From positions 1-64,000 of the IMG/VR virus record IMGVR_UViG_3300042515_001753: a stretch of DNA of 64,000 bases; one strand, 5' to 3'. Positions 9,962-31,014 of this stretch are shown here, piece after piece; position 1 is the stretch's first letter, and each line of letters starts with the position of its first letter. The notes beneath the pieces are model-generated. The model ran no database searches. It was not told the origin of the DNA and saw only the letters and a list, made by a program, of their open reading frames with translations. The position numbers and the translations under genes are program-made.

Positions 9962-9988
9962 TTATTATACCATTATTTGGTTTTTATA

Positions 9989-11774: not shown

Positions 11775-11789
11775 TTAAATAAAAAGGGT

Positions 11790-13573: not shown

Positions 13574-13579
13574 CGTAAA

Positions 13580-14425
13580 TTAAATTTTATTTAAATTGTA
13601 AGATTGATATTTTTTCAAGTATTTTTGAGACTGATAATATCTCTCTAGTTGTTTTTGATTTAGACTTTGTAAGTAATCCCACAACTCATTATTTCTCCTA
13701 ATGTGTGGATTACCAAAGCCAGAATTATGACCTCTAAAATGTTCTAGATGATATACATATGAATAATCAATTCTCCCAACATTATAACCTAAAATTTTAA
13801 AACGTAAATATCTTTCTTTGTCTTCCGGAGACCAAGAAATAAAGTTCTCATTTTCCATTCCGGCATTAATATAGGATTTTCTCTTAAAGAATTGAACATG
13901 TCCAAACTCAGACCTATAAATATTTGATTTTTTTTCTAAAATTGAAAAATCAAAATCATTATTAATAAAATCACTTACAAGTTCATCAGTTGTAAAAATT
14001 TGATACTGATAGTCTCCAAACCCATACGGATAGACTAAATCATAATTTTTTTCTACGATTAATTTTACTGCTTCTATACATGCCTCTGGTTTCAATAAAG
14101 CATCACAATCATAATTAACCACAACATCAGTTTTTACTTGATCTAGCATTTCGTTTAGAATTTTCATTCTATGAAATTCTAAACTATCAGATTCTTCAAA
14201 CAAATATATAAGATTATTAATTTCATCTTCATCCAAAAATTCTTTAATTTGTTCTATAACATACTCTTGAACAAGAGGTTTAGAATCAACTTCTTTTAAG
14301 ATTACTTTGGTGTTAAAAGTTTTAAGAAGATAGCAAAGAACTGTAGTAATATTTCTAGTTCTATCACCAGAATCAATCCTAATAGGAATTATGAAAGTAC
14401 AATCTGATAAGTCTATTTTTTTCAT
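13580..14425 (-). CDS. GT-A fold glycosyltransferase (GT2/GT7-like)
   Basis: FIIPIRID, NYDCD (DxD), GMENENFISWSPED. Confidence 0.8.
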   Translation of the reverse strand: MKKIDLSDCTFIIPIRIDSGDRTRNITTVLCYLLKTFNTKVILKEVDSKPLVQEYVIEQIKEFLDEDEINNLIYLFEESDSLEFHRMKILNEMLDQVKTDVVVNYDCDALLKPEACIEAVKLIVEKNYDLVYPYGFGDYQYQIFTTDELVSDFINNDFDFSILEKKSNIYRSEFGHVQFFKRKSYINAGMENENFISWSPEDKERYLRFKILGYNVGRIDYSYVYHLEHFRGHNSGFGNPHIRRNNELWDYLQSLNQKQLERYYQSQKYLKKYQSYNLNKI

Positions 14426-15204
14426 ATTTTAATCCACTCATCCAAATATAAATCTTGTGTTTGATTTTTAGAAGTATTACTATCTTCCCCAAACCACCGC
14501 AAAGGAGCAATCACTTTTTTAGATTTTGCTAACCATGCACCCCACCAAGAGAATGAAGAATTAGCAATAATATGATAATCGCACATACTCATCAAACACA
14601 AATCAATAAATCCATTATGAGATTCTGAAATAATAAATCGTTCCGATTCAAATAATTTTTGCGACTGACACCAACCAACATCATCGGAAAAAATTATTAC
14701 AGGAATATCAGAATCAAAGTGTTCTAGTGCTCGTTCATAATACGAAAGACTGCAAGGAGGGTGATTCGTAGAATTAGATACATAATCAGTTCGTCTTACA
14801 TGCAGAGCAATAATTTCATCAAACTTAAAATTAGATACACAGGGTTCTAAAATATAATTTTTAAATGTAAAATCTTCTCTGATACTATCTTCAATATGTT
14901 TGAAATATTTTTCACTCTGATAATATCCATGTAAATTTACATTATCTGGACAGTTATCAACATACTCTGGGTCATAGTGAAATTGTTTTTCGGGATAAAA
15001 ATCTGCAGGAATGAATCCAATATTCTTTACACTCTTCATCTCAAAAACATCAAAGAGTTTATTATCTTTCCATTTATCACCATAATCAGTTTTAGGAATA
15101 CAAAAATCATATCCTTTAGTTGCAGAAATACCTCTCAGTGAGGCATATTGAAACATTTGATTTGCCAGTCTACCATACTGACCAAGATAATTAAATCCAA
15201 TCAT
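14422..15204 (-). CDS. Alpha-1,2-fucosyltransferase, GT11
   Basis: GRLANQMFQYA, GYYQSEKYF, HVRRTDY, NSSFSWWGAWL. Confidence 0.92.
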   Translation of the reverse strand: MIGFNYLGQYGRLANQMFQYASLRGISATKGYDFCIPKTDYGDKWKDNKLFDVFEMKSVKNIGFIPADFYPEKQFHYDPEYVDNCPDNVNLHGYYQSEKYFKHIEDSIREDFTFKNYILEPCVSNFKFDEIIALHVRRTDYVSNSTNHPPCSLSYYERALEHFDSDIPVIIFSDDVGWCQSQKLFESERFIISESHNGFIDLCLMSMCDYHIIANSSFSWWGAWLAKSKKVIAPLRWFGEDSNTSKNQTQDLYLDEWIKI

Positions 15205-15208
15205 GCTA

Positions 15209-15997
15209 CTAAGAATAAAGAATAGTTTTTTTGTCAGCAGGAGAATGAATCATCCTTGCAGAAAAATCAAACTCATTATCAGGATAATTTCCAGGTTTTG
15301 CAAAGGAAGGATGCAGTATGTGGAAATCATCATAATTTTCAATCCTATATCTATTTAAATGACTTTCATCATGTGCCGCTGCCATTACATTATTTTCCAA
15401 ATCTTTTTTGATTCTTTCATCAAGTTCATCAATTAATTTAAAAATTTCTGGAATTTTACCACCCCAAATACATCCTTGAAGATATACATCGTCCTTTTCC
15501 TCTTCTTCAGTTACACATGATAAGGATCTTGTATTTCTTTCAAAAGGTAAATATTGAAGAAATTTACTCCAGTTAGCACTAAAAGTCGGATGTTGTACTC
15601 CGAAAAATGGTTTTTCATCATTGAAAAAATCTTGATATGTAATTAACTGATCGCAACAATACATATCAGCATCAAAGTATACATACCAATCATAATCCTT
15701 TAATTGGCTTTCAATTTTTTTAATCTCTCCAAATCTTCTCAATCCACCGATACTATTATACATCAAATTATACCAATTATCTGAAGAATAATCTGATGTG
15801 GTAATTTCAATATTTTCAGATGATGGTATAATTTTAATATTGTCTGGAATGTCATCTCCAAGATCTCCATCTGTAAAAACAAAAAAATCTTTCTGACATT
15901 CTGGAACAAAATATTCCATCAGTGTCTCATAATACTTTGGAAAGAATTTAAGATAATTTCCCGTTCCAATAAAGTTTATTGCTATTTTTTTATTCAT
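15209..15997 (-). CDS. Glycosyltransferase family 6 (alpha-1,3-Gal/GalNAc transferase-like)
   Basis: FIGTGNY, FVFTD, FDAD, HDESHLNRY; start moved to the ATG at 15997. Confidence 0.88.
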   Translation of the reverse strand: MNKKIAINFIGTGNYLKFFPKYYETLMEYFVPECQKDFFVFTDGDLGDDIPDNIKIIPSSENIEITTSDYSSDNWYNLMYNSIGGLRRFGEIKKIESQLKDYDWYVYFDADMYCCDQLITYQDFFNDEKPFFGVQHPTFSANWSKFLQYLPFERNTRSLSCVTEEEEKDDVYLQGCIWGGKIPEIFKLIDELDERIKKDLENNVMAAAHDESHLNRYRIENYDDFHILHPSFAKPGNYPDNEFDFSARMIHSPADKKTILYS

Positions 15998-15998
15998 A

Positions 15999-16946
15999 TT
16001 AACTATTGGTAATGATTTTTTCAACTGAAGAAATATAATATTTTTGAAGTATCTCTTTCCAATCAAACTGCTTTGAATATTCTACAATTTCTTTTCTATT
16101 ATTTACAGCATATTTCCTATTCTCAATAATTTTATTCTCAACATACTCCAAATCGGAGATTTTGTTTTCGGGAATGATTGTAATAAATTCTTTATTAATA
16201 TCTAAATTTGCTCTCCCCCATTCACAAACAACCACACCAAGTCCAGCGGAAAGTGCCTCCATACAAACAAGTGGATGTGCTTCGCCATCGGAAAGTAAAA
16301 CAAGGTTTCCGTATTGAGTTAATTCATTATATAATGTATCTTTTCCCCACTCACCCAAATAATTTTTAGAAGTATCAAATCTAGAATCAGCAATATTTCC
16401 AGCATACCAAAGACTAGGAATTGTCTGAAACATAAACTGACGCTTCCTATAATCTACCTTTGCAAGATAGATTGAACGATCTGGATACTCTGGATTATCT
16501 ACATAATTAAATTTTCCTCTGTTTACTCCATTTGGTGTTAAGAACAACTTGTCTTCAGGCAGATTCAATAATACTTTATACATATTTTGAATTCCCTCAG
16601 ACAGACAGAATGTATTCGGTCTGAGTCGAGCAAAGTCATTAGCAATATTCACATATCCACCAAAGAGTTCAGGTCTTTCTAAGTAACCATAATGACTTGT
16701 AATTGCCTTTGGTTGTTGAATATGAGGATATAAAGTAATAAATTCATCATAATGAATGTGAACAAAATCAGATCCAAAAGAATTAACATCTTTTATAATC
16801 TGATTATAATCTTTAGTATTCACAATTTGAACTTGATGTCCTAGAGATTCTAAAGCAATTTTAGTGTCCCATATAAGAATTTCTACCGCACCCCAACCAA
16901 GAGGTGGAATAGGCATAATTCCAGGACCGATTAAAGATATTTTCAT
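15999..16946 (-). CDS. GT-B glycosyltransferase (GT4-like)
   Basis: IPPLGWGAVE, EAHPLVCMEALSAG. Confidence 0.85.
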   Translation of the reverse strand: MKISLIGPGIMPIPPLGWGAVEILIWDTKIALESLGHQVQIVNTKDYNQIIKDVNSFGSDFVHIHYDEFITLYPHIQQPKAITSHYGYLERPELFGGYVNIANDFARLRPNTFCLSEGIQNMYKVLLNLPEDKLFLTPNGVNRGKFNYVDNPEYPDRSIYLAKVDYRKRQFMFQTIPSLWYAGNIADSRFDTSKNYLGEWGKDTLYNELTQYGNLVLLSDGEAHPLVCMEALSAGLGVVVCEWGRANLDINKEFITIIPENKISDLEYVENKIIENRKYAVNNRKEIVEYSKQFDWKEILQKYYISSVEKIITNS

Positions 16947-17839
16947 AGATTCTTTTCAACCCATTCCTCTAATTTTACACTTGGATTCCAACCAAAAATT
17001 TTATTAATTTTTTTATTATTTGCAAGAGTAATTCTTGACTCTCCAGGTCTAGGTGCTAGATTAATAACATTATTCGAAATCATTCTTGCAATTTGATTAA
17101 TAGAATGATTTGTTCCGGTGCCGACATTATATACTTGCCCAAATGCTTCCCAATCTGGATTGGAAATAGCAGCCATCACATTTGCCTTCACAACATCACT
17201 AACATGAGTAAAGTCTCTCCGCTGATTACCATCACCAACGATAGTCAGAGGTTCTCCTGCTGCCCTCTGACGAAGAAAAATACCAATCACAGGAGCATAT
17301 TGTCCACGTAAAGGTTGACGCTCACCATAAACATTAAAGTATCTAAAGCAAACAGTGGGAAGACCATAAAGACTAGTATACATTTTGCATAGTTTTTCGC
17401 CATTTACTTTTGAAACTGAATAAGGATTTAAACAGTCATCAGGTTGTGTTTCAATATTTGGTGATTGATTCATTCCATATGCAGAAGAGGTTGAGGAGTA
17501 CATCAATCGCTTTACCCCTGCTTCTCTTGAGCACTGAAGAACTGTACATGTACCAACAGAGTTAATACTTACTGCTTGAATAGGATTTTCAATTGCAGGT
17601 TGAATACGTGCCTCTGCAGCAATATGGAAGACATAATCTACTCCATCGTATAGGGGGCGAGTGTTTTCATAATCACGAATGTCATACTTATAATTTTGCG
17701 CTTTATCATTCCAGTAAAACTGTTCATGAACATCCGAATATTCATTATCAATTACAACAACCTCGTGCCCCATTTCAAGAAGACAATCTACTAGATTTGA
17801 TCCGATAAATCCTGCGCCGCCAGTAACTAAACTTTTCAT
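16943..17839 (-). CDS. NAD-dependent nucleotide-sugar epimerase/dehydratase
   Basis: VTGGAGFIGS, YSVSK, RYFNVYG. Confidence 0.92.
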   Translation of the reverse strand: MKSLVTGGAGFIGSNLVDCLLEMGHEVVVIDNEYSDVHEQFYWNDKAQNYKYDIRDYENTRPLYDGVDYVFHIAAEARIQPAIENPIQAVSINSVGTCTVLQCSREAGVKRLMYSSTSSAYGMNQSPNIETQPDDCLNPYSVSKVNGEKLCKMYTSLYGLPTVCFRYFNVYGERQPLRGQYAPVIGIFLRQRAAGEPLTIVGDGNQRRDFTHVSDVVKANVMAAISNPDWEAFGQVYNVGTGTNHSINQIARMISNNVINLAPRPGESRITLANNKKINKIFGWNPSVKLEEWVEKNL

Positions 17840-18642
17840 ACCATTTCTTGAAATAAACAAAGATGATTTTTACCATTAACTCTATGAAACTTAGTAAAAA
17901 GATTCTCTTTTGTTTTACAGAGATATCCAATTGCTATTTGTTCATTATTTACATTTTTATTCTTAATCATATAATCCAAAACATGATCGATTTCATTGCT
18001 GATATTTTTAATAGCAATTTTATTTCCACCAAACATGCTTCCACAGATAAAAGACCGATTATCCCAAAAATAACTTTCGGATAATGTTTGAGAATTTACA
18101 AGATCAGGATAACATTCAGTATTATACTGGATTAAGAAGGTATTGTCAATTTGTTCTAATGCTTGAAGAGTATCTTCACTGGGGTAATCATTTTCAAGAT
18201 TGCAGTCATATAAAAATCGACTGGCACCTGCGTCTAACCAAAAGAAAAATTTAGAGTCAAAAGAATTAATCTCAGATGCTTTTTTCAACCACTTAAATTT
18301 AGAATATTGAATGACAGGATACATTGAGTAGTTGCACTCAACTCTATTTGTGTCTGCCATATTTTCTTTATAAAATTCAGAATCGATAACTTCTTGAATT
18401 GAATCTTTCAGATGAAAATATGGTATTTGTTCCAAAGGTTCAACAATAATTTCGGTCGGTAAATCTTGCCTGACTTCTTTAATAGTTTCAACCAAAGACT
18501 CTTCTGTAAAAATAATAAATGGACATTTTACACTTAATGTCTTTGAAAACCATTCTAGATAATCTTCCCAACTTCTATTATCATCTCTTTGTAGTTCTTG
18601 AACATTATATAAAGAAGTAACAATTACAAAATCAGTTTTCAT
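17836..18642 (-). CDS. HtrL/WlaTC-like glycosyltransferase
   Basis: IVTSLY, YSKFKWL, FWLDAG, NNEQ. Confidence 0.7.
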   Translation of the reverse strand: MKTDFVIVTSLYNVQELQRDDNRSWEDYLEWFSKTLSVKCPFIIFTEESLVETIKEVRQDLPTEIIVEPLEQIPYFHLKDSIQEVIDSEFYKENMADTNRVECNYSMYPVIQYSKFKWLKKASEINSFDSKFFFWLDAGASRFLYDCNLENDYPSEDTLQALEQIDNTFLIQYNTECYPDLVNSQTLSESYFWDNRSFICGSMFGGNKIAIKNISNEIDHVLDYMIKNKNVNNEQIAIGYLCKTKENLFTKFHRVNGKNHLCLFQEMV

Positions 18643-19204
18643 TTTTATAGAGGTAGATAATATCGTCATACTTATTTTTATTTGCTCTCAAATCAACAAT
18701 TTCAAAAGTATCAAGATATTCAGAAACTTTCCATCCTGGATTATCATCAACATCTTCAATAATATAATAACCACCTGGTTTAAGTTTTGATTTAAGAATA
18801 TTCCAAGTTTTTAATGTAAGATCCGGATTATGGGAAGCATCATCAATAATTAAATCAAATTGTGGGCAGTTTTCAAATGAACTTGGATCATCTTGAGACC
18901 CTTCTGGTAGAAAAATAAATCTTTCTTTCTCTTCTTCTGTAAGTTGGAGATTAGAATATTCTTTATCAAATCCATAGATTTTAGTTTTATCTGAAAAAAT
19001 ATCTCTCCACATTCTCAAACTATAACCAGAAGATACTCCTACCTCTAAAACACAAAGATCTTTATTGTCTTTAACTTTTTCGAAAACTTCCGGATAAAAA
19101 AGTTCATAAGAATGATCTGATCCCTTATCACTACAACCAGTCCAGGGGGTAGAACTATAATGTTGAATGATTTCTTTTGCTTTTTGTTTGAATGATTTTG
19201 CCAT
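18632..19204 (-). CDS. Class I SAM methyltransferase
   Basis: SDKGSDHSY, LEVGVSSG, IIDDASH, LKPGGYYIIED. Confidence 0.85.
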   Translation of the reverse strand: MAKSFKQKAKEIIQHYSSTPWTGCSDKGSDHSYELFYPEVFEKVKDNKDLCVLEVGVSSGYSLRMWRDIFSDKTKIYGFDKEYSNLQLTEEEKERFIFLPEGSQDDPSSFENCPQFDLIIDDASHNPDLTLKTWNILKSKLKPGGYYIIEDVDDNPGWKVSEYLDTFEIVDLRANKNKYDDIIYLYKNEN

Positions 19205-19205
19205 T

Positions 19206-20084
19206 TTATTTCATATTTTTAAAATGTTCAAAGTTAACATGCTCAACCCAATTTGGCCACATATTAACTTGTAAAGGTTTGCAAGATTCGTAGTCAAAAT
19301 TATGAATATAAAATTTGGAATCAATTTTATATTTCTCATACCAATCTGTTGCTTGTTTATATATGATCGCTCCAAAGTCGCCCAATCCGATTTTTAAATT
19401 TTTCCTAGAGCAAACTTCTATGCAATAGTCTCTTACATGAATTACACCATTTTCATAAACACTTGGAATAAATTCATACCATCCAGATAAAAACTTTTCC
19501 ATAGATTCTGGGTTTCCCAAGAAAAACCAATCGCAAGGATTATTAGGAAACTCTCCGGCATACAAATGACCACCATTCATTGAACTTTGAAAATATATTG
19601 TATCTGACTCTAGAGTAACCTGGGATAATATATCTTTAATTGGTTTAGTTAAAATAACATCTGGTCTAGATTTAATAACGACATCGATATTATTATATTT
19701 TTTAGTTTGCAAAAATGCTTGATAGTTGGAATAAGTTTGACTTAGAAGACCATATAAAACTATTGGAGTAATGATTTTATAATGCTCTATACTTTCACCC
19801 TTCCAAACATCAAAATTAAATTTTTTAAAGAATGTAATATCAAAATCTTTATGCTTTTCAACACTACAATCAGTTACCTTATATCTTTCTATAAATTGTT
19901 TATCTAAATTTTCATCACCAAACCGATCAGTAAACCATAACTTATAAACTTTTTTATGATAAGATTTATCCCACCAAAGATGAGAGCAAACCTTATCATT
20001 TTCATCTATCTGATAATTGGAAAAATAACTAATATTTTCATCATAAAAAATAGGTTGTCCAGAAAATAAAAAAGCGCAATTCAT
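19206..20084 (-). CDS. Putative glycosyltransferase-like protein
   Basis: FSGQP start, KSRPD, DWFFLG; paralogue of 24643-25386. Confidence 0.55.
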   Translation of the reverse strand: MNCAFLFSGQPIFYDENISYFSNYQIDENDKVCSHLWWDKSYHKKVYKLWFTDRFGDENLDKQFIERYKVTDCSVEKHKDFDITFFKKFNFDVWKGESIEHYKIITPIVLYGLLSQTYSNYQAFLQTKKYNNIDVVIKSRPDVILTKPIKDILSQVTLESDTIYFQSSMNGGHLYAGEFPNNPCDWFFLGNPESMEKFLSGWYEFIPSVYENGVIHVRDYCIEVCSRKNLKIGLGDFGAIIYKQATDWYEKYKIDSKFYIHNFDYESCKPLQVNMWPNWVEHVNFEHFKNMK

Positions 20085-20782
20085 TTTTCAAAAATAAAAT
20101 TTGCAACTTGTAGAGTATATTTCCCACAATGAATTGTAAAAGGATCTGGTTCAGAATAATCACAAGAACCTATCAGAGTTAAACCCGTCGATTCAATCAG
20201 TTTAACAACTAATTCCGGTTTAATAAACTCACCAAATTTATTTTCAACATCAACATCAGAAACAATAATAAATTTACCGCCAGGTTTGAGGACTCTATAA
20301 ACTTGTTCTGCAATATCTTTCCATCCCTGATTATTAATTTTATTAGTATGAGATCCATTAAAATGTGTTACAGCGCAAGAATCTACAAAATAATCTACTG
20401 AATTATTTTCCATATCCTTAACTTCGGCAAGAGCATCATTCAAAACCATCCGAACTAAACTTCCGGAAAATGAATGACTAACATCGCTAATATCAATTCC
20501 GGTTACATCATGACCCAATGAAGAGATGATGTGAGGTAGGGGAGAACTAGAACATCCAAGATCTACGACAGTTTTTTCAGTTTGATCTAGTTTTTCAAAA
20601 TAATCTGCGATTAAACACCACTTCATCAAAGCATCATCATTTTCCCAAGTAACATGGGGAAATTTTTGAAGATACCCATACTCTTTAACTTTACTTCTAC
20701 AAAACTCTAAATCAATTGCATTCAATAATTTACTATTAAAATTCATTTCAAACAACCTCTTTCCACTGTGCTGAGTTTTCAA
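20081..20782 (-). CDS. SAM-dependent methyltransferase
   Basis: VDLGCS, RVLKPGGKF. Confidence 0.85.
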   Translation of the reverse strand: MKTQHSGKRLFEMNFNSKLLNAIDLEFCRSKVKEYGYLQKFPHVTWENDDALMKWCLIADYFEKLDQTEKTVVDLGCSSSPLPHIISSLGHDVTGIDISDVSHSFSGSLVRMVLNDALAEVKDMENNSVDYFVDSCAVTHFNGSHTNKINNQGWKDIAEQVYRVLKPGGKFIIVSDVDVENKFGEFIKPELVVKLIESTGLTLIGSCDYSEPDPFTIHCGKYTLQVANFIFEK

Positions 20783-21431
20783 TAACCTCCATATCAGTAA
20801 TCAATCCAACTCCAACAATATCTTCGTGATACTCTGAGGTAACATCAGTATATGTTGGAACATATAATTTAACCCCATTTAATGCTCCCATAACTTCTCC
20901 AGGTCCACAAATTTTTCCACCACAAACATCATACTTAGCATGTGAAACATATGGGTTTTGGAAGTCGTCAATAAAAATTGTATAATTTTTAAAATTAGTA
21001 GTTACAAAATTGACTTCATCAAACAAGGGCCAGGAATACATATGCTGTCCGTTTTCCATCCACTCCCCATGTGCATCGAACCAAAAAACGGTTTTCTTAT
21101 CTTTTAGATCTGGTTCTTTAGCAAAGACATAATGAAGAATTTCTGGTGATGGCATTTTTTGCATATCAACATTCTTAAAATCCTTTAAGATATCATAAGA
21201 CACCGAATATCTGTAGTCATCAATCTCACAGGTATATACCTTTTTGTCCGAAAAATTATCAGCAATAAAATAGGAACTTTCAGCATAAGCAGTTCCGGTT
21301 TCAATAAAAATATCCGAATCTTTCATACACTCATAAACAGTATCAATAATGTAAGTGTCTCCATGAAAGGGATTACCATGCTCCCAACCTGCGGGATCTT
21401 TACTAAAGTTGGCTATTTTGTATTTTGCCAT
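20748..21431 (-). CDS. Methyltransferase-like protein
   Basis: FIETGT, FWFDAH, IFIDD. Confidence 0.65.
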   Translation of the reverse strand: MAKYKIANFSKDPAGWEHGNPFHGDTYIIDTVYECMKDSDIFIETGTAYAESSYFIADNFSDKKVYTCEIDDYRYSVSYDILKDFKNVDMQKMPSPEILHYVFAKEPDLKDKKTVFWFDAHGEWMENGQHMYSWPLFDEVNFVTTNFKNYTIFIDDFQNPYVSHAKYDVCGGKICGPGEVMGALNGVKLYVPTYTDVTSEYHEDIVGVGLITDMEVIENSAQWKEVV

Positions 21432-22159: not shown

Positions 22160-22160
22160 A

Positions 22161-23651: not shown

Positions 23652-24646
23652 TAATTAACTACTTCAATAAGTTCTTTAACTCTGCTTATATAAGTATGAT
23701 TTTCTTTAACAAAAAGCATTTGAGATTTAATTAAGTCATAGTTCTCTTTTTCTTTTTGAGCATCAAAGAATAATTGATATGTATCCTCATTATAAATGAT
23801 ATTACCATCAAAAAATTCATATACTGGTTTTGAATTAGTAACTCCCAGTTGACCATAACTAATGTTTTTGAAATTCCTACAAGGAATATAACCCCACTCT
23901 TTAAATGCTTTGTGTCTTACATCGGGCGCAAGATAAGATTTTTGAATTATTTTCCTCTGTTCTTCAAAAGATTGAGGACTAATCCAAGGGCAGTTATACT
24001 TAAATTCAATACCACCCTCTTCACAAGCCCGAATAAAAGGATTTAAATAAACTAAGTTATCATACTCGGGTGGTGCAGTTTTACAATCTTTTGGACCACC
24101 CTGCCCGCCGCCAATTGTTCCAGCAAAGAAGACATAATTTTCTTTGGGAATATACATATCTTCTAAATTTATTTCATCGGGCAATAAGTCAGTTGCCCAA
24201 GTTGTATAAAAATAATCATATTCCGAACCTTTCTCAAAATAACAACCAGAACCAATCTTTGCTGCTTTACTGCGGTCTAAAGAATAGTTGTAATTTTTAT
24301 CAACCCATTTATCAGCATTATATCTAACATCAATCAATCGTCCAACCTTACCAAGATAAGCGCCTGCTCCAGGATTACCTTCTACACGATTATCTTTGTT
24401 TCCAATATAATGAACTGCATAAGTAGAGTTGCTAAACAGTGGAATATTTGGATTTCCAATAACTGCCCACTGTTCAGTAAAAATCAAAGCATCATTGAAT
24501 ATTTGAGGATCAAAATTATCTGAACCATCAATCCAATAAGTTTCATATCCTAGTGCCTTAAAAGCATTATAATATCCGGAATGAATATATGAATGTGTAT
24601 GAGAATATAATTTATATCCCCACACAATAACTCTTTTATGTTTCAA
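23648..24646 (-). CDS. GT-B-like protein
   Basis: HTHSYIH, GYIPCR, HTYISR C-terminus. Confidence 0.55.
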   Translation of the reverse strand: MKHKRVIVWGYKLYSHTHSYIHSGYYNAFKALGYETYWIDGSDNFDPQIFNDALIFTEQWAVIGNPNIPLFSNSTYAVHYIGNKDNRVEGNPGAGAYLGKVGRLIDVRYNADKWVDKNYNYSLDRSKAAKIGSGCYFEKGSEYDYFYTTWATDLLPDEINLEDMYIPKENYVFFAGTIGGGQGGPKDCKTAPPEYDNLVYLNPFIRACEEGGIEFKYNCPWISPQSFEEQRKIIQKSYLAPDVRHKAFKEWGYIPCRNFKNISYGQLGVTNSKPVYEFFDGNIIYNEDTYQLFFDAQKEKENYDLIKSQMLFVKENHTYISRVKELIEVVNY

Positions 24647-25386
24647 AATGATACCCCCAAATCTAATGACTTTGTTTTAATTTGATTATTTTTTAAATGA
24701 TTTCTAAGTAATAGTTCAACACACCAAATATTTTCTTCAGACATTACTTGATGATAAACTGGTTCAAAATGATAATATAGACTACTCCAAACATTCATAA
24801 TTTTAGGAGATCCCATTCCAAACCAATCACTAATCATACCTGAAGGTTGATTTAAATCTTGATAATATAAGATATCTGATTCAAATTTTGAATTTAAAAA
24901 ATCTATCTTAACAGAAGGGCTTACATCATATCTTAAAGTAATTACAAAATCATACTTTACATTATTTTCAATAGAATAATTTTCCCTAAGAAAATTGACC
25001 ACCATTTTACTATAGCATTGACTATGGCATCTATCAATAGTATACTTTTCAAAAAATTCTATTCCATTTGGATCATCCAACCCATAATCAAAACATTTTT
25101 TAATGTTTTCTTCTGTTACTTTAATATTTGAATTTTCCCAAAGTTTTGGTTTTTCAAAGTAAAAAGATTTTGGAGCATAGATATCTAAAAGTTTTTTATC
25201 CATATCAATGTCACAAGATCTACCCCAATGCCCTGGAGTTCTTTTGCCATAATCTAGATTATTAGGATCATACCAACAATGTAGAAAAACGTCTACATCA
25301 TTACCATCTATGAGAGTTTGTTTAATTCTTTGAGAAGTTTGTATGGCATTACGTGGTTGACCAGACAAACATAATGCAATTTTCAT
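24643..25386 (-). CDS. Putative glycosyltransferase-like protein
   Basis: KIALCLSGQPR, DVFLHCW, LRYD. Confidence 0.55.
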   Translation of the reverse strand: MKIALCLSGQPRNAIQTSQRIKQTLIDGNDVDVFLHCWYDPNNLDYGKRTPGHWGRSCDIDMDKKLLDIYAPKSFYFEKPKLWENSNIKVTEENIKKCFDYGLDDPNGIEFFEKYTIDRCHSQCYSKMVVNFLRENYSIENNVKYDFVITLRYDVSPSVKIDFLNSKFESDILYYQDLNQPSGMISDWFGMGSPKIMNVWSSLYYHFEPVYHQVMSEENIWCVELLLRNHLKNNQIKTKSLDLGVSF

Positions 25387-26372
25387 AAGGAAATTTCTTT
25401 TACCACTTTTTTAATTAAAAATTCAATATTTGTATTAGGTTCCCATCCCAAAATTTGTTTTGCTTTTTGATAAGTTCCCTTAGAATATTTATTGGTTTCT
25501 TTTGCAACAATTTGCTTATCGAGTGAATAAAACCCATCGAATAGTTCTGGATAATTATCCCAAAGTTTTGATGCTTCTCTATAAATTGGTTTAATATTTG
25601 TGTTAAACACTTCACAGATATAACTTGCGATTTGATTTACAGAAACAAGTGTCCCCGTACAAACATTAAAGGTATCATCTGGTTTTTTCTCTAAACATAA
25701 ATCAATCAATTTGACAACATCATCAACATGAATATAATCTCTACTCTGTTCACCATTAGAATGTAGTATTGGAGAATTATTATTCATAATTTCCCTAACA
25801 ATATAGTTAATCAAAGGTGGGTGTTTTCTATGAATATCTTGTCTTGGACCAAATACATTAAAAAATCTGAGTGTAGTAACTGGCATACCATAATTTAATC
25901 GGTATGATTCGCAAACTTCCTCAGACATTTTTTTAGATAAAGAATACCAAAGTCTTGGATTTACTTTTAAATCTTCAGTAAAAACTTTTTCTTTATTATT
26001 CTCGTAAACTGCACTTGTACTTGCAAAAATTACATGGGGAACATTCCATTTCCTAGCACATTCAAGAATATTCATTGTGCCAGAAACATTTACATTAATA
26101 GTTTCAACTGCATTAGTTTCACAATCAGGAAGTGCGGTAATAGCGGCAAGATGAATAATACAATCATAATCATCTTTGATTAATTCATTTAGATTAGAAT
26201 TACAAATACTAAGATTATAAAATTTTCCAAAAGTTTCACCGTTAATGGTTAAATTTTCCAAATATCCATTTCTTAAATTATCAATAAATGTAAGTATGTG
26301 TCCTTTTTTATATAAGTAATATCCTAAAGTAGATCCTATTCCACCTGCCGCTCCTGTTAAAAGTATTTTCAT
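25383..26372 (-). CDS. NAD-dependent epimerase/dehydratase
   Basis: LTGAAGGIGS, YSLSK, RFFNVFGP. Confidence 0.9.
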   Translation of the reverse strand: MKILLTGAAGGIGSTLGYYLYKKGHILTFIDNLRNGYLENLTINGETFGKFYNLSICNSNLNELIKDDYDCIIHLAAITALPDCETNAVETINVNVSGTMNILECARKWNVPHVIFASTSAVYENNKEKVFTEDLKVNPRLWYSLSKKMSEEVCESYRLNYGMPVTTLRFFNVFGPRQDIHRKHPPLINYIVREIMNNNSPILHSNGEQSRDYIHVDDVVKLIDLCLEKKPDDTFNVCTGTLVSVNQIASYICEVFNTNIKPIYREASKLWDNYPELFDGFYSLDKQIVAKETNKYSKGTYQKAKQILGWEPNTNIEFLIKKVVKEISL

Positions 26373-27427
26373 TTTAAGAACTCCTTTAAATTATCACTAT
26401 TTCTTGGTATATTAATTGCCTCGCAAGAAGGATATGGATTACTTTTTGCAAAATCATTAATGATCACTCTCTTACAATGAGGTAATCCCATAACTAGTTC
26501 ATCATATAAAATATTTTTTTCTTCTAATTCAGAGACCGTTATATCTTTCATATGTTTTGGTCTACTTGTTGTCAAAATTATTTTTACTTTACCTGATGCA
26601 TATAAAGAATTTAAATAATTAATATTGTCTTGAAGAGGATCGGCATTACCAATATAAGGTGGAAAATGTATAGAAGAGTTTGTTACCAAAGTTCCATCGA
26701 TATCAACAAATAAACACTTATATTGAGATTTATACTTGTTCCAAGATTCAAGCGTTCCCCAATCTTTAAAATTAAAAGTTTTAAGACCATAAAAAGTAGA
26801 ACCAGATAACATCATCTCAAATATAATATGGCTAATATAGCACTCACCTTCCATGTCTTTTAGTTTCTCATAGGTAACACAAAATTCTTTTGCATCAGAG
26901 AAAGCATATCCACCACTGGAAAAAGTAGAACTAATAACTTGTTTTTCTACAATATTAGTTACTATTTCATTAATATCAAGTTCAATATAACTTTTAGTTC
27001 TAGCATTAATATTATCCATATCATTTAAGTCAAAATATGCAATTTGGTTTTTTTCTTCTACCAATTCACATTCATAATATCCATCAGAATCTTTAATAAA
27101 AATGAATCCATCTAATGAATTTTTATTTAAAAAATTATAAACAGTCTCTGACTGAGATTTAGTTTGATTGGATAGTAGAATAATATTTGATTTTTTATTT
27201 AATTGAAGTTCTTCAAGTTCTTCAGTAAAACCTTTTATAAAATTATATTTGTCTTCATGTTCTTGAAGGCAAATAAAATATATACTTTCAAAAAAATCTA
27301 AATTTAATCCTAATATAGATTCCGTAACCATAAATCTATTAGTCATTGGATGTGTTAGCATCCATTTTGGTCTCATATTTGGGAAACGACTAGACCTTCC
27401 CGCCATAGGAATTATTAAAGTCCGCAT
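26369..27427 (-). CDS. Nucleotidyltransferase fused to HAD phosphatase
   Basis: IIPMAGRSSRF..PKW, DWGT, then VDIDGT, TTSR, IIND. Confidence 0.85.
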   Translation of the reverse strand: MRTLIIPMAGRSSRFPNMRPKWMLTHPMTNRFMVTESILGLNLDFFESIYFICLQEHEDKYNFIKGFTEELEELQLNKKSNIILLSNQTKSQSETVYNFLNKNSLDGFIFIKDSDGYYECELVEEKNQIAYFDLNDMDNINARTKSYIELDINEIVTNIVEKQVISSTFSSGGYAFSDAKEFCVTYEKLKDMEGECYISHIIFEMMLSGSTFYGLKTFNFKDWGTLESWNKYKSQYKCLFVDIDGTLVTNSSIHFPPYIGNADPLQDNINYLNSLYASGKVKIILTTSRPKHMKDITVSELEEKNILYDELVMGLPHCKRVIINDFAKSNPYPSCEAINIPRNSDNLKEFLK

Positions 27428-28217
27428 ATAACTTTGACGATTTTACCATTGTATCAAGTATACTTCTTTGATCAGAAAAAGTCAAGTAAGGTTCAATTCT
27501 CAAACTATTCATTGCTTCTAAAATATCAAATTCATCAGTATCAATAAATTTAGAGTATCTATAATAAAGTTGATTCCAGATATGTTTATAAATTTGCTCC
27601 AATCTATTTGACTGTATGTTTTGAGTTTTGATACCCCAGAGATGGTAAAGATCTTGTTTCAATTTGACAAGATCAGAAATAAAACTATCAACATAACAGT
27701 CAAGAAAATCAATAAAAAATAATCTATTTTTATGAAAAATAATATTATTAAAAGTTAAATCTCCATGACAAAAAGTTTTAGGAACATAAACATCTTGCTT
27801 ACCAATTAAAAGTTCAATGTATTCCAAATAATTCTTATAACAAGTTTTATTTTTTAAAAATTTAATTTTTTCATCAATATTTGGTTGAACATTAATCAAT
27901 CGATAGTTTGAAATAAGAGAATCAAAATATTCAAATAAAGTATCAATGACAAATTCTATGTCCTTAATAGAAGATGTAGAAAAAAATTTCACAAAAGATT
28001 TTCCAGGAATGTATTCCATATCAAAATACCCGTCCTGAATATTATGAACTTTGGGGGTATCTATATTCTTTAAAATTCGATGAGAAAATAAAACTTGTTT
28101 ATTAACTTGTAAAGAAAGTCTTGAGTTATAATTGATTGATGAAGAATATTTTCTAAGTACTCTGCTATCAATTAATTCAAGTTTACATCCAGATAATCCT
28201 ACAGAAAAATCTAACAT
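27390..28217 (-). CDS. APH/choline-kinase-like phosphotransferase
   Basis: GLSG, MEYIPG, CHGDLTFNNI, FIDF. Confidence 0.8.
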   Translation of the reverse strand: MLDFSVGLSGCKLELIDSRVLRKYSSSINYNSRLSLQVNKQVLFSHRILKNIDTPKVHNIQDGYFDMEYIPGKSFVKFFSTSSIKDIEFVIDTLFEYFDSLISNYRLINVQPNIDEKIKFLKNKTCYKNYLEYIELLIGKQDVYVPKTFCHGDLTFNNIIFHKNRLFFIDFLDCYVDSFISDLVKLKQDLYHLWGIKTQNIQSNRLEQIYKHIWNQLYYRYSKFIDTDEFDILEAMNSLRIEPYLTFSDQRSILDTMVKSSKLYADFNNSYGGKV

Positions 28218-28260
28218 TGAGGATATTGATAAATTTTATGCTACTTTCATTAGAAATAAT

Positions 28261-29193
28261 TTAAATAATATTTTCCAAATACCACTTATAAGTTGATTGA
28301 ATACCTTCACGAAGACCAATTTTGGGATTCCAACCAAGTGCTTTAATTTTATCCACATTCAAAAGTTTTCTTGGTGTTCCATTTGGTTTTGTTGCATCCC
28401 AATTGATATGACGGTCATAACCAACAACATCAGAAATTGTTTCTGCCAGTTGTTTAATTGTCACATCCTCACCAGTCCCAACATTAATATGTTCTGGATT
28501 ATTATAATTTTTCATAGAAATATAACATGCTTCAGCCAAATCGTCAACATGAAGAAATTCTCTCATAGCAGAACCATCTCCCCATAGTTTCACTTCCCAA
28601 TGTTCGCTATGGTTAAGGGAATTATGAAACTTAGCAATCATCGCAGGAAGAACGTGCCCAGTCTCCCAATCAAAGTTATCATAAGGACCATAAAGATTTG
28701 TAGGCATTAAAGAAATTGCCTTAAACCCATATTGCTTATAATATGCTTGACACATTTTAACGCCAGCAATTTTTGCTATTGCATAAGCATCATTTGTAGG
28801 TTCTAGAGGGCTTGATAATAGTTGATCTTCAGTAATCGGTTGTTTAGCAAGTTTTGGATAAATGCAAGATGAACCAAGAAATAAAAGTTTCTTAACACCA
28901 AAATTATAAGATGAATTAATGATATTATTTTGTATCATTAAGTTATCATATATGAATTCTCCAGGATAATTGTAATTTGCCATAATACCACCAACTTTTG
29001 CAGCGGCAAGAAAAACATATTCAGGTTCTTCTGAGCAAAAATATCTTTCAGTTTCATCTTGATTTGTAAAATCTACATCGTCACGAGTTCCTTTGATGAT
29101 GTTAGTATATCCTTTACTTGCAAGATTTCTGACAATTGCAGATCCAACCATTCCGTTGGCACCTGCAACTAAAATTTTAGAATCACTGTCCAT
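28261..29193 (-). CDS. fcl: GDP-L-fucose synthase
   Basis: [39 protein letters not shown]. Confidence 0.95.
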
Positions 29194-30184
29194 AAATGCA
29201 CATATCCTCAACTAATTGATTAAAAGAAATCTTAGGTTCCCAACCTAATTTTTTCTTTGCCTTAGAGGCATCCCCCAATAAAGTCTCTACTTCAGCAGGT
29301 CTAAAATATTTAGGATTGACTTTAATGACTGCTTTCTTAGTATTCCAATCATATCCCACCTCATCAAGACCTTCACCCATCCATTCAATCTTCATACCAA
29401 AGTAAGGTGCTGCTGCCTCAACGAACTCACGCACCGAGTACTGCTCTCCTGTGGCAATTACATAATCATCTGCCTCATCTTGCTTAAGCATTAACCACAT
29501 CGCCTCTACGAAGTCCTTAGCGTGTCCCCAGTCCCTCTTTGAGTTTAGATTCCCGAGATATAATATATCTTGTTCCCCAGTTGAAATGCGTGATAATCCT
29601 CTAGTGATTTTTCTTGTAACAAAAGTTTCTCCTCTTCTAGGGGATTCGTGATTGAAAAGAATTCCAGAAGATGCATGTAATCCGTAAGATTCTCTGTAGT
29701 TTTTGACGATCCAGTATCCATATAATTTTGCAACTCCATAAGGTGAACGAGGATAAAATGGTGTGGTTTCTTTCTGAGGTATCTCTTGAACTTTACCGAA
29801 CATCTCAGAAGTAGATGCCTGATAAATTCGGGTTTTATTCTCCATACCAAGAAGACGAACTGCCTCAAGAATACGAAGAGTGCCGAGACCATCAACCATA
29901 CCAGTATACTCAGGTATCTCAAAAGACACTTTTACATGACTCTGAGCACCCAGATTATATATTTCATCTGGTTGAACTTGCTGAATAACTCTTACAAGAT
30001 TTGTGGAGTCAGTCAAATCACCATAGTGCAATTTGATTTGATTGTAAATATGATCAATTCTTTGAGTATTGATTTGAGAAGCACGACGAATAATACCATG
30101 AACTTCATATCCTTTCTCTAGGAGAAGTTCGGCAAGATATGATCCGTCTTGACCTGAAATTCCCGAAATTAAAGCAACTTTCAT
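29183..30184 (-). CDS. gmd: GDP-mannose 4,6-dehydratase
   Basis: [39 protein letters not shown]. Confidence 0.97.
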
Positions 30185-30204: not shown

Positions 30205-30239
30205 ATTATAGCAAAAAAGGAGAGTTTATGCAACTCTCC
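30205..30239 (-). promoter_or_regulatory. Terminator with embedded promoter for the glycan operon
   Basis: GGAGAGTT-GCATA-AACTCTCC-T6 overlapping TTGCAT-17-TATAAT. Confidence 0.75.
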
Positions 30240-30293
30240 TTGTATAGCATGTAATAACCCTTTAATCAAGGGGGAGTTGCGCTTCTCCAGGTT

Positions 30294-30388
30294 GCTCGCC
30301 ACCAATTCTTTGACTGGAAATTGGAAACCAGACGGGAGTAACCTCCATCCGCACCAGTCGTCATTTATATCGCCCATACGACAAGGGC
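30294..30388 (-). ncRNA. wcaG-like RNA motif
   Basis: Two pseudoknot-like units each ending in UGGUG, upstream of gmd/fcl; family name from memory. Confidence 0.65.
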
Positions 30389-30412
30389 ATTAAGGGGTCA
30401 TATTTGACTCCA

Positions 30413-30938: not shown

Positions 30939-31014
30939 CGCTTTGATTTGTTTACCTTGTTATTATAGAGTGATTTGAGTTTTATGTCAAGTGTACCAGT
31001 CTCGGAACTGGCAA

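What the first reader, a model, noticed from the sequence alone, without database searches (positions are those of the whole stretch)
14422..30184. Phage operon with the enzyme set for an ABO-blood-group-like glycan
Seen: adjacent GT11 and GT6 genes plus gmd and fcl in a 20-gene cluster with GT25, further GTs, two epimerases and four methyltransferase domains. Known: GT11 makes the Fuc-alpha1,2-Gal acceptor that GT6 extends (A/B antigens, E. coli O86). Inference: a fucosylated, methylated glycan for host LPS remodelling or virion coating.
Basis: partly seen in the sequence, partly recalled or inferred. Interest (0 to 1): 0.65.

Follow-up and report, generated by a model that had tools for sequence, protein, structure and literature searches.

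The report
Cyanophage fucose-glycan operon, known type
A lake-water T4-like cyanophage carries a 20-gene operon that makes GDP-fucose and encodes about ten sugar-adding enzymes, including an adjacent GT6/GT11 pair like those that build human ABO antigens. Clusters of this kind have been known in cyanophages since 2005, and nobody has yet shown what glycan they make.

Summary
GT11 (14422-15204) and GT6 (15209-15997) are adjacent, and gmd and fcl head a 20-gene cluster on the minus strand. The cluster runs 12782-30184, so GT25 and one more GT lie outside the stated coordinates. Only three methyltransferase domains could be verified, not four.

The window is the first 64 kb of a complete 233.9-kb T4-like cyanomyovirus found repeatedly in lake-water metagenomes. 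The cluster is the syntenic, enlarged counterpart of the P-SSM2 "LPS cluster" (gmd-fcl…GT11…GT6…GT25), published in 2005. Cyanophage GT6 was already discussed as an ABO-synthase relative in 2012-2014.

New here:
- A wcaG RNA plus a terminator hairpin sits directly before gmd.
- Neither the cluster nor the whole genome encodes a flippase, polymerase or initiating transferase.
- There is no T4-type late promoter in the cluster.
- Three unassigned ORFs have glycosyltransferase folds.
- GT11 lies within 10 kb of GT6 in 66 of 68 viral loci.
- dN/dS is 0.04-0.22, so the genes are not filler DNA.
- This GT6 subclade lacks the acceptor-stacking Trp of ABO enzymes.

A fucosylated, methylated glycan is likely. 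An A/B-like epitope is plausible but unproven. Whether it goes on host LPS or on the virion is unresolved.

The parts
30962..30990 (-). Candidate sigma-70-type (early) promoter, TTGACA-17-TATAAT. It lies upstream of two small ORFs, the wcaG RNA and the operon.
   Evidence: 12 of 12 consensus positions match. This is a consensus match only; function is inferred.
30288..30390 (-). wcaG RNA motif (RF01761), an orphan riboswitch candidate. It forms the 5' leader of the operon.
   Evidence: 71.4 bits against a gathering score of 42, full length 1-98. It is the only copy in the 146-kb record. The same motif precedes gmd in L114 at 97.6 bits. PMC2864571 describes the motif.
30217..30241 (-). Intrinsic-terminator-like hairpin (10 bp, then a T run) between the wcaG RNA and the gmd start codon. 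It is the probable expression platform.
   Evidence: One search found it, and the fold forms the hairpin. Any switching behaviour is inferred.
29183..30184 (-). gmd, GDP-mannose 4,6-dehydratase.
   Evidence: PF16363, E 3.8e-153. TIGR01472 at 554.5 bits, above the 415 cut-off.
28261..29193 (-). fcl-like GDP-L-fucose synthase. Its start overlaps the end of gmd by 11 nt.
   Evidence: NF047922 at 463.9 bits, E 2.6e-139, under the 500-bit cut-off. Start codon. S-SCSM1 has the same 11-nt overlap.
27390..28217 (-). Small-molecule kinase-like protein with an APH/choline-kinase fold; presumed sugar kinase.
   Evidence: PF01636, E 6.4e-8; PF01633, E 2.6e-5. It travels with the next two genes as a module in other loci. 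Substrate unknown.
26369..27427 (-). Two-domain protein. The N-terminal part (residues 1-235) is like a sugar nucleotidyltransferase. The C-terminal part is a HAD phosphatase or mutase-like domain.
   Evidence: HAD domain: (weak hits, E 5e-4 to 1e-10 in PHROGs). N-terminal domain: protein-atlas feature score 0.96 to NTP_transferase clusters, which is a lead only.
25383..26372 (-). SDR nucleotide-sugar epimerase/dehydratase 1.
   Evidence: PF01370, E 5e-52. One search gave no equivalog assignment.
24643..25386 (-). GT-A-fold putative retaining glycosyltransferase (DUF7796-like).
   Evidence: AF2 model pLDDT 88.9. Foldseek top hits are GT6 enzymes and glycogenin, E about 1e-6, TM about 0.45.
23648..24646 (-). 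GT-B-fold putative glycosyltransferase.
   Evidence: AF2 model pLDDT 85. Foldseek top hits are SenB, T4 alpha-glucosyltransferase, TreT and FUT9, E about 1e-5.
22161..23642 (-). 493-aa protein. The first ~310 residues are unknown; the C-terminal part is a class I methyltransferase domain.
   Evidence: PF13578 (weak); phrog_21658 methyltransferase, E 5e-17. The N-terminal part has no hit.
21413..22159 (-). Unassigned 248-aa protein. Its conserved DGG…EPD pattern is reminiscent of GT-A enzymes, but this is not verified.
   Evidence: Alignment A4. No PDB, Pfam or profile match. Conserved in many loci.
20748..21431 (-). Unassigned 227-aa protein.
   Evidence: No family hit. dN/dS 0.055-0.11.
20081..20746 (-). 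SAM-dependent methyltransferase (Methyltransf_11 type).
   Evidence: PF08241, E 1.4e-7.
19206..20084 (-). Paralogue of the 24643-25386 gene: a second GT-A-fold putative glycosyltransferase.
   Evidence: hhalign probability 98.3%. Atlas neighbours are viral DUF7796 clusters.
18632..19204 (-). SAM-dependent methyltransferase (Methyltransf_24 type).
   Evidence: PF13578, E 4.6e-8.
17836..18642 (-). HtrL_YibB family protein. This family is named after a gene beside the E. coli LPS-core cluster.
   Evidence: PF09612 at 50.5 bits against a cut-off of 24.1.
16943..17839 (-). SDR nucleotide-sugar epimerase/dehydratase 2.
   Evidence: PF01370, E 6e-58.
15999..16946 (-). GT-B (GT4/GT1-like) glycosyltransferase, widespread in cyanophage clusters.
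   Evidence: weak PF00534 and PF13439 hits; phrog_33732 glycosyltransferase, E 7e-167.
15209..15997 (-). GT6 family retaining alpha-1,3-Gal/GalNAc-transferase homologue. It has the DXD motif (D-A-D), the His233 equivalent and HDESHLN. It has Ala at human W300 and Gln/Cys at human positions 266/268.
14422..15204 (-). GT11 family alpha-1,2-fucosyltransferase homologue with the H-V-R-R-T-D motif.
13580..14425 (-). GT-A glycosyltransferase (GT2 / beta-4-GalT-C-domain-like).
   Evidence: PF02709, E 1.2e-4; PF00535, E 0.009. It is the most variable gene among relatives, at 60-87% amino-acid identity.
12782..13573 (-). GT25 (LOS/LPS-core beta-galactosyltransferase family).
   Evidence: PF01755 at 56 bits against a cut-off of 24. 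D-D-V-D motif.
12160..12191 (-). Strong terminator-like hairpin (13 bp) after one small ORF; probable 3' limit of the transcription unit.

Best explanation
This is a riboswitch-fronted glycan operon of a T4-like cyanomyovirus. It is one of the known cyanophage 'LPS / cell-wall modification' clusters.

Shown:
- The phage encodes its own GDP-L-fucose pathway (gmd, fcl).
- It encodes about ten soluble glycosyltransferases, including a contiguous GT6-GT11-GT2-like-GT25 block.
- It encodes three methyltransferase domains and two further SDR enzymes.
- All 16 genes that could be tested (SDR1 to GT25) are under purifying selection.

A three-gene module (kinase, nucleotidyltransferase-HAD fusion, SDR) probably makes a second nucleotide sugar. 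That reading rests on weak family hits and a feature-similarity lead, so it is inferred rather than shown.

Inferred mechanism:
1. Transcription starts from a host-type (early) promoter.
2. It is gated by the wcaG RNA and its terminator.
3. In the cytoplasm the enzymes build a fucosylated, O-methylated oligosaccharide.
4. Its terminal part is made by a beta-galactosyltransferase (GT25 or the GT2-like enzyme). GT11 then adds alpha-1,2-fucose, and GT6 adds an alpha-1,3-hexose or N-acetylhexosamine. The result is an H-, A- or B-like cap.
5. The phage encodes no initiating transferase, flippase, polymerase or exporter. The glycan must therefore be built on a host lipid-linked acceptor (lipid A-core or an undecaprenyl-linked unit) and exported by host machinery.
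6. This changes the surface of the infected cell. The likely benefit is to stop further phage adsorption to cells that are already infected.
For: - Family assignments.
- Motifs: GT6 has DXD, the His233 equivalent and the Glu303 equivalent. GT11 has HxRRxD.
- New fold assignments for 24643-25386 with its paralogue 19206-20084, and for 23648-24646.
- Operon anatomy (overlapping starts, one strand).
- wcaG RNA and terminator.
- No late-promoter motif in or before the cluster, against 10 on the coding strand elsewhere in the window.
- No hydrophobic segment in any cluster protein, and no ORF with five or more such segments in the complete 233.9-kb genome.
- GT11 within 150 nt of GT6 in 48 of 68 IMG/VR loci and within 10 kb in 66 of 68, in both gene orders and across 36-100% GT6 identity.
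- Same gene order in independent contigs.
- dN/dS 0.04-0.22 for 16 genes against three relatives.
- Syntenic clusters in P-SSM2 and ACG-2014f.
- A related DXD-type GT6 from Parachlamydia transfers GalNAc only to fucosylated acceptors: PMC3516806.
- GT25 and HtrL_YibB are LPS-core-type families that act on the cytoplasmic face. This rests on established knowledge of those families.
Against: - No biochemical data exist for any cyanophage GT6 or GT11.
- This GT6 subclade has Ala at the acceptor-stacking Trp (human W300) and Gln/Cys at the donor-selecting positions. No characterised enzyme has these residues.
- Only a crude hydrophobicity scan tested for membrane enzymes.
- Promoter and terminator calls are consensus matches.
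- Nothing in the sequence shows that the acceptor is LPS rather than a protein or another polysaccharide.
- Relatives of gmd, fcl and the leader occur in contigs of one marine RNA library, but that does not prove transcription.
Confidence: 0.55

Rival explanations
1. Virion glycosylation. The soluble enzymes decorate phage capsid, tail or fibre proteins in the cytoplasm with a fucosylated, methylated glycan. Chloroviruses do this (they encode gmd and GDP-fucose synthase and carry methylated, fucose-rich capsid glycans), and so do some mycobacteriophages. The coat would shield virions or tune adsorption.
For: All enzymes are soluble, and no lipid-linked assembly or export genes are present. That fits direct protein glycosylation as well as it fits LPS work. 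One gene combines an unknown domain with a methyltransferase. Atlas neighbours of the DUF7796-like GTs include giant-virus clusters. Tail-fibre genes lie within 6-10 kb. The chlorovirus and mycobacteriophage precedents come from my own knowledge and were not checked in papers here.
Against: There is no T4-type late promoter in or before the cluster, while structural genes in the window have one. The cluster sits among host-physiology genes (pstS, psbA, ferritin-like gene, tRNAs) and behind a wcaG RNA that elsewhere fronts exopolysaccharide and high-light genes (PMC2864571). GT25 and HtrL are LPS-core families. I found no report of glycosylated cyanophage virions.
Confidence: 0.2
2. A fucosylated glycan, but not ABO-like. 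In this GT6 subclade the enzyme uses another acceptor or donor, so the product does not carry an A or B trisaccharide.
For: The Trp that stacks on the acceptor galactose in GTA/GTB and BoGT6a is Ala or Gly in the whole window subclade. It is kept in P-SSM2, ACG-2014f and chlamydial GT6 (PMC3516806). Positions 266/268 are Gln/Cys, against Leu/Gly in GTA, Met/Ala in GTB and Ala/Gly in P-SSM2 and Chlamydiia. The subclade also carries an insertion of about 20 residues. In 7 of 24 loci of this subclade GT11 is not adjacent.
Against: GT11 remains the immediate neighbour in 16 of 24 loci of this subclade. The catalytic core (DXD, His, Glu) is intact.
Confidence: 0.35
3. Glycosylation of phage DNA to escape restriction, as with the T4 glucosyltransferases.
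For: One fold hit of the GT-B protein is T4 alpha-glucosyltransferase. A homologous gene is annotated 'DNA beta-glucosyltransferase' in S-SCSM1. The idea was raised for S-SCSM2R (PMC12801897).
Against: GDP-fucose synthesis, GT11, GT6, GT25 and O-methyltransferases have no known role in DNA modification. The fold hit is generic GT-B, with TM about 0.5.
Confidence: 0.03
4. Non-functional passenger or 'stuffer' DNA that fills the large capsid. Sullivan et al. 2010 left this possibility open.
For: The cluster's GC content is lower than the rest of the genome, 0.310 against 0.372. PMC3037559 states that function is unknown.
Against: dN/dS is 0.04-0.22 in all 16 genes compared. All 20 reading frames are intact. 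Gene order is conserved in independent contigs. A conserved regulatory RNA fronts the cluster.
Confidence: 0.02

Closest known systems
LPS gene cluster of Prochlorococcus phage P-SSM2, with its relatives in P-SSM5, S-SSM7, S-SM2, ACG-2014f, S-SCSM1 and S-SCSM2R
   Same: The host virus type is the same (a large T4-like cyanomyovirus), and so is the genome neighbourhood (after pstS and tRNAs, before hli or psbA). The frame is the same: gmd-fcl at the head, then GT11, then GT6, then an SDR, and GT25 at the tail (PMC1079782, PMC3037559).
   Different: The window's cluster is larger. It adds the kinase / nucleotidyltransferase-HAD / SDR module, two DUF7796-like GTs, a GT-B enzyme, HtrL and three methyltransferase domains. 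GT6 precedes GT11 and the two are directly adjacent. GT6 is only 30-41% identical to those of isolates. A wcaG RNA above the Rfam threshold fronts gmd here but not in the P-SSM2, ACG-2014f or S-SCSM1 loci. The source is lake water.
Bacterial and vertebrate GT6 histo-blood-group synthases (human GTA/GTB, B. ovatus BoGT6a, Parachlamydia PaGT6, E. coli O86 WbnI)
   Same: It is a Pfam GT6 member. It aligns over 230 residues with GTA/GTB at E 3e-12. It has a DXD motif like the vertebrate, phage and chlamydial clade, plus the His233 equivalent and HDESHLN with the catalytic Glu.
   Different: It is a minimal catalytic domain with no membrane anchor. The acceptor-stacking Trp is replaced by Ala. Positions 266/268 are Gln/Cys. 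It carries an insertion of about 20 residues. Activity is untested.
E. coli O86 O-antigen gene cluster (blood-group-B-like O unit)
   Same: It combines GDP-fucose synthesis, a GT11 fucosyltransferase and a GT6 transferase in one locus.
   Different: The phage has no wzx, wzy or initiating-transferase equivalent, in the cluster or anywhere in its genome. It cannot make and export an O antigen on its own. It also adds methyltransferases and many more GTs.
wcaG RNA motif (Rfam RF01761; Weinberg et al. 2010)
   Same: It is a full-length match above threshold, in a T4-like cyanophage, upstream of exopolysaccharide-type genes, exactly as the family was described (PMC2864571).
   Different: Here a clear terminator hairpin follows 47 nt downstream and directly precedes gmd. 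That gives a concrete expression platform. The ligand is still unknown.
Chlorovirus (PBCV-1) virus-encoded glycosylation machinery
   Same: A virus encodes gmd and GDP-fucose synthase together with soluble GTs and methyltransferase domains. The comparison is from my own knowledge.
   Different: The host is eukaryotic and the known target is the capsid protein. No sequence relationship was tested here, and the target of the cyanophage enzymes is unknown.

Membership tests
CAZy GT6 (PF03414) | Sequence membership above the curated threshold | tested here: met
   58.4 bits against a cut-off of 25, confirmed on the genome. phmmer against GTA/GTB gives E 3e-12.
CAZy GT6 (PF03414) | DXD (metal-dependent) or NXN motif, and the catalytic Glu in HDESHLN | tested here: met
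   D-A-D aligns with human D211-V-D213. HDESHLN is identical to the human sequence around E303. The His233 equivalent is invariant.
CAZy GT6 (PF03414) | Acceptor-binding Trp (human W300, BoGT6a W189) that stacks on the fucosylated galactoside | tested here: not met
   Ala in the window protein, and Ala or Gly throughout its subclade. Trp is kept in P-SSM2, ACG-2014f and Chlamydiia (PMC3516806).
CAZy GT6 (PF03414) | Transfer of alpha-1,3-Gal or GalNAc to Fuc-alpha-1,2-Gal | not testable with these tools
   Needs an enzyme assay.
CAZy GT11 (PF01531) alpha-1,2-fucosyltransferase | Sequence membership and the HxRRxD GDP-fucose motif | tested here: met
   97 bits against a cut-off of 23.9. H-V-R-R-T-D is present.
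GDP-L-fucose de novo pathway (Gmd + Fcl) | Both enzymes present as equivalogs | tested here: inconclusive
   Gmd passes (554.5 against 415). Fcl scores 463.9, just under the 500-bit cut-off, though at E 2.6e-139 and overlapping gmd by 11 nt as in annotated phage fcl genes.
Cyanomyovirus LPS / cell-wall-modification cluster (P-SSM2 type) | Located in a T4-like cyanophage hypervariable region, with gmd/fcl, GT11, an SDR and GT25 co-occurring | tested here: met
   PMC3037559 lists GT11 (T4-GC 260), an epimerase (265) and GT25 (266) as co-occurring.
Self-contained Wzx/Wzy- or ABC-dependent O-antigen cluster (E. coli O86 type) | Initiating phosphoglycosyltransferase, flippase or ABC transporter, and polymerase (all polytopic membrane proteins) | tested here: not met
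   No cluster protein has a hydrophobic segment above 1.61. No ORF in the complete 233.9-kb genome has five or more such segments. This was a hydrophobicity scan, not family-specific HMMs.
wcaG RNA (RF01761) | Covariance-model match above the gathering score, in the 5' leader of a polysaccharide gene | tested here: met
   71.4 bits against 42, model positions 1-98, ending 104 nt before the gmd ATG.
wcaG RNA (RF01761) | Ligand-dependent switching | not testable with these tools
   The ligand is unknown. Only a terminator hairpin was found downstream.

The most novel reading that the evidence does not exclude
The wcaG RNA is a true riboswitch that senses a nucleotide sugar or a related host metabolite. 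It gates an early phage operon whose product, a methylated histo-blood-group-like glycan made by a GT6 subclade with altered acceptor recognition, is placed on the virion or on a non-LPS host structure. This would be a metabolite-controlled viral glycan coat in a bacteriophage.
Probability: 0.1. Interest if true: 0.75.

Novelty: new member of a known kind. Interest (0 to 1): 0.33.

Why it matters
Cyanomyoviruses kill a large share of the picocyanobacteria in oceans and lakes. Many of the large ones spend 15-20 kb on glycan genes, and twenty years after their discovery the product and purpose are still unknown.

This locus does not change that picture, but it sharpens it in four ways:
- The genes are under purifying selection, so they are not filler.
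- GT6 and GT11 form a tightly linked module across hundreds of wild viral contigs.
- The phage depends on host export machinery.
- The operon can sit behind an orphan riboswitch candidate with a clear terminator.

If the product is an H/A/B-like epitope, aquatic phages would be a large environmental reservoir of blood-group-type glycosyltransferases. That bears on the proposed horizontal origin of vertebrate GT6.

Tried and rejected
- Profile searches of three unassigned proteins against PDB sequences gave nothing. Folding was needed, and the fold cap (two jobs) left 21413-22159, 20748-21431 and the N-terminal 310 residues of 22161-23642 unassigned.
- hhalign of these profiles against GT6, the GT2-like protein and the GT4-like protein found no relation.
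- A fourth methyltransferase domain was not found.
- GT11 has no sequence relative among solved structures.
- The wcaG RNA was not found above threshold in the P-SSM2, ACG-2014f, S-SCSM1, L004, L127 or L141 loci, so the leader is not a general feature of these clusters.
- A search for GT6 in picocyanobacterial host genomes could not be run. The one genome-collection scan returned only its best 80 of 164 hits, none cyanobacterial and all at or below 39% identity.
- RNA evidence is weak. One marine metatranscriptome holds contigs 85-96% like gmd, fcl and the leader, which is presence in an RNA library and not proof of transcription of this phage.
- The position of human A343 / bovine W356, which admits or excludes the 2'-fucose, could not be aligned reliably in the C-terminal tail. 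I draw nothing from it.

Full report
WHAT THE WINDOW IS

The window is part of an IMG/VR virus record of 146 kb. That record is 100% identical over 145,987 bases to a 233,886-bp IMG/VR genome that CheckV rates complete, and window coordinates equal coordinates in that genome.

PHROG matches show a T4-like cyanomyovirus: gp43 DNA polymerase, NrdA/B, pstS, cytidylyltransferase and tail fibres. The nearest isolate in core genes is the freshwater Synechococcus phage S-SRM01, at about 79% nucleotide identity. The stretch occurs in 22 lake-water metagenome runs from as many studies, several of which may be the source sample.

THE OBSERVATION

Twenty consecutive genes lie on the minus strand from 30184 down to 12782. 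They overlap or are at most 43 nt apart, and eight junctions are 4-nt overlaps.

Pfam and NCBIfam assign the following:
- gmd (TIGR01472, 554 bits, cut-off 415)
- an Fcl-like GDP-fucose synthase (464 bits, just under the 500 cut-off, E 2.6e-139)
- a kinase-like protein
- a protein with a HAD domain
- two more SDR epimerase/dehydratases
- Methyltransf_11 and Methyltransf_24 enzymes, and a third methyltransferase domain at the end of a 493-aa protein
- an HtrL_YibB protein
- a GT4/GT1-like protein
- GT6 (58 bits, cut-off 25)
- GT11 (97 bits, cut-off 23.9)
- a GT2/GT7C-like protein
- GT25

Two details of the finding need correction. GT25 and the GT2-like gene lie at 12782-14425, outside the stated coordinates. 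Only three methyltransferase domains can be shown.

Several starts listed as TTG are better placed at downstream ATGs, which then match the gene lengths called in related contigs. For GT6 the start is 15997.

WHAT THE UNASSIGNED GENES ARE

I built alignments from natural relatives found in viral contigs.

- The 247-aa protein (24643-25386) folds with pLDDT 88.9. Its closest solved folds are GT6 enzymes and glycogenin, that is, retaining GT-A transferases.
- The 292-aa protein (19206-20084) is its paralogue, with hhalign probability 98.3%.
- The 332-aa protein (23648-24646) folds with pLDDT 85 into a GT-B glycosyltransferase. Its top hits are SenB, T4 alpha-glucosyltransferase, TreT and FUT9.
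- The N-terminal 235 residues of the HAD-containing protein resemble sugar nucleotidyltransferases by language-model features. This is a lead only.

With the kinase-like gene before it and the SDR after it, that protein forms a three-gene module that moves as a unit between cluster architectures. It probably makes a second activated sugar, whose identity I cannot tell.

Three pieces stay unassigned: 21413-22159, 20748-21431 and the first 310 residues of 22161-23642.

In total the operon holds about ten glycosyltransferase-type proteins.

REGULATION

A full-length wcaG RNA (RF01761, 71.4 bits, threshold 42) lies at 30288-30390 on the coding strand. It is the only copy in the 146-kb record. A 10-bp hairpin with a T run lies at 30217-30241, between the RNA and the gmd start at 30184.

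wcaG is an orphan riboswitch candidate. It was described from marine metagenomes and T4-like cyanophages, upstream of exopolysaccharide and high-light genes (PMC2864571). The same RNA precedes gmd in a differently organised viral contig (L114, 97.6 bits). It does not reach threshold in the P-SSM2, ACG-2014f or S-SCSM1 loci.

A perfect sigma-70 consensus lies at 30962-30990, upstream of two small ORFs and the leader.

The T4 late-promoter motif TATAAATA occurs ten times on the coding strand of the window, each just upstream of an ORF. It never occurs in or before the cluster, although the cluster is the most AT-rich part of the window. I infer early or middle transcription by host polymerase, gated by the leader. 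This is inference from consensus matches.

WHAT THE CLUSTER LACKS

None of the 20 proteins has a membrane-spanning segment. No ORF in the complete 233.9-kb genome has five or more hydrophobic segments. The phage therefore encodes no initiating phosphoglycosyltransferase, flippase, polymerase or ABC exporter.

Whatever is built must be assembled in the cytoplasm. It is built either on a host lipid-linked acceptor that host machinery then exports, or on proteins.

HOW COMMON IT IS

- By tblastn, GT6 occurs in 72 phage records, GT11 in 105 and gmd in 84. Nearly all are cyanomyoviruses.
- In IMG/VR, 248 viral contigs encode a GT6 relative.
- Among 68 fetched loci with at least 1 kb on both sides of GT6, GT11 is within 150 nt in 48 (32 upstream, 16 downstream) and within 10 kb in 66. 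GT25 is present in 60 and the GT4-like gene in 62.
- The window's exact gene order recurs in independent contigs at 78-100% amino-acid identity. Identity is mosaic from gene to gene. In L091-L094, for example, GT6 is 99% identical, GT11 86% and the GT2-like gene 63%.
- Other architectures reshuffle the same modules. One has gmd-fcl-aminotransferase-GT6-(GT11 fusion).
- dN/dS against three relatives is 0.04-0.22 for all 16 genes compared. This answers the 'stuffer DNA' doubt left open in PMC3037559.
- The cluster's GC content is 0.310, against 0.372 for the rest of the genome.
- In one genome per prokaryotic species, the best cellular GT6 relatives are at most 39% identical, and none of the best 80 is a cyanobacterium. 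The scan kept only 80 of 164 hits, so hosts were not properly tested.

COMPARISON WITH WHAT IS KNOWN

P-SSM2 carries the following order: pstS … gmd – fcl-like – SDR – GT2 – GT2 – dioxygenase – GT1 – hyp – GT11 – hyp – hyp – GT6 – hyp – SDR – GT25 – hli. ACG-2014f has a similar cluster. These 'LPS clusters' were published in 2005 and 2010 (PMC1079782, PMC3037559) and extended in 2022 and 2025 (PMC9602691, PMC12801897).

The P-SSM2 GT6 and its marine-metagenome relatives were placed in a DXD-bearing prokaryotic clade of GT6. That clade was proposed as a model for the ancestor of the vertebrate enzymes. A member of it from Parachlamydia transfers GalNAc to H trisaccharide or 2'-fucosyllactose, but not to LacNAc (PMC3516806, PMC3961637).

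The full-text searches found no paper that tests what any cyanophage cluster makes.

HOW FAR THE ABO ANALOGY HOLDS FOR THIS GT6

The enzyme keeps D-A-D at the DXD position, the His233 equivalent, and HDESHLN with the catalytic Glu. It is only 30% identical to P-SSM2 GT6 and belongs to a separate subclade that carries an insertion of about 20 residues.

In that subclade the Trp that stacks on the acceptor (human W300; W189 in BoGT6a, PMC3516806) is Ala or Gly. The two donor-selecting positions (266/268) are Gln/Cys. They are Leu/Gly in GTA, Met/Ala in GTB, and Ala/Gly in P-SSM2 and chlamydial sequences.

Donor and acceptor therefore cannot be read from the sequence. The best argument for a fucosylated acceptor is the persistent linkage to GT11, with gmd and fcl in the same operon.

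MOST LIKELY MECHANISM

1. An early transcript passes the wcaG gate.
2. gmd and fcl raise the GDP-fucose pool, and the kinase / nucleotidyltransferase-HAD / SDR module supplies a second sugar.
3. The GTs and methyltransferases assemble a methylated oligosaccharide on a host lipid-linked acceptor at the inner face of the membrane.
4. The contiguous GT25 / GT2-like / GT11 / GT6 block makes a terminal Gal, then Fuc-alpha-1,2-Gal, then an alpha-1,3 cap.
5. Host machinery exports the product and the infected cell's surface changes.

I put about 0.85 on 'makes a fucosylated glycan', about 0.45 on an A/B-like cap, and about 0.5 on LPS as the carrier. Virion glycosylation is the main rival, at about 0.2.

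VERDICT

This is a real, functional and nicely complete operon, but it is a new member of a known kind. Its main added value is fourfold: the wcaG-terminator leader, the demonstrated dependence on host export, the population-level linkage of GT6 with GT11, and the divergent acceptor site of this GT6 subclade.

Noticed in passing
window 9285-11904 (- strand): psbA appears to be split by three group I introns: RF00028 at 11242-11479, 10441-10667 and 10114-10366. Photo_RC exon pieces lie at 11451-11774 and 10630-11169, and a PhotoRC-II RNA lies upstream at 11814-11904. A NUMOD3/HTH protein at 9285-9905, resembling a homing endonuclease, follows. To my knowledge, three introns in one phage psbA is more than the single intron usually described.
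   Followed up: partly
window 35094-37809, 31015-31088, 31972-32044 (- strand): A large tRNA set: 20 tRNAs by ARAGORN, 18 of them in one array. An abiF RNA match (RF03085) sits right after the array at 37817-37853.
   Followed up: no
window 30395-30480 (- strand): A direct repeat of about 25 nt (core GGAGAG-CTCTAAAAGTACTGGT) occurs twice, between the stop of the small ORF 30469-30726 and the wcaG RNA. Related contigs vary here and in the 30240-30294 linker, while the RNA and the terminator are kept.
   Followed up: no
G001:C1:225446-227006 (same phage, outside the window): Two more tandem GT25 paralogues, 28% identical to the cluster's GT25, lie near the other end of the complete genome.
   Followed up: no
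window 31500-31943 and 32465-33427 (- strand): A ferritin-like protein gene with a TATAAATA late-promoter motif before it, and pstS, lie just upstream of the glycan operon. This is the same pstS-then-glycan-cluster order as in P-SSM2.
   Followed up: partly
L091-L094 versus window 12782-25386: Near-identical relatives (98-100% in most genes) drop to 82% in the 493-aa methyltransferase protein, 86% in GT11 and 63% in the GT2-like gene. This suggests gene-sized recombination inside the cluster, as in bacterial O-antigen loci.
   Followed up: partly
L009, L010, L013-L016, L018, L020 (genome contigs): The best 'cellular' GT6 relatives (33-38% identity) sit on contigs binned as DPANN or Thermoplasmatales archaeal MAGs. 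These may be mis-binned viral contigs rather than archaeal genes.
   Followed up: no
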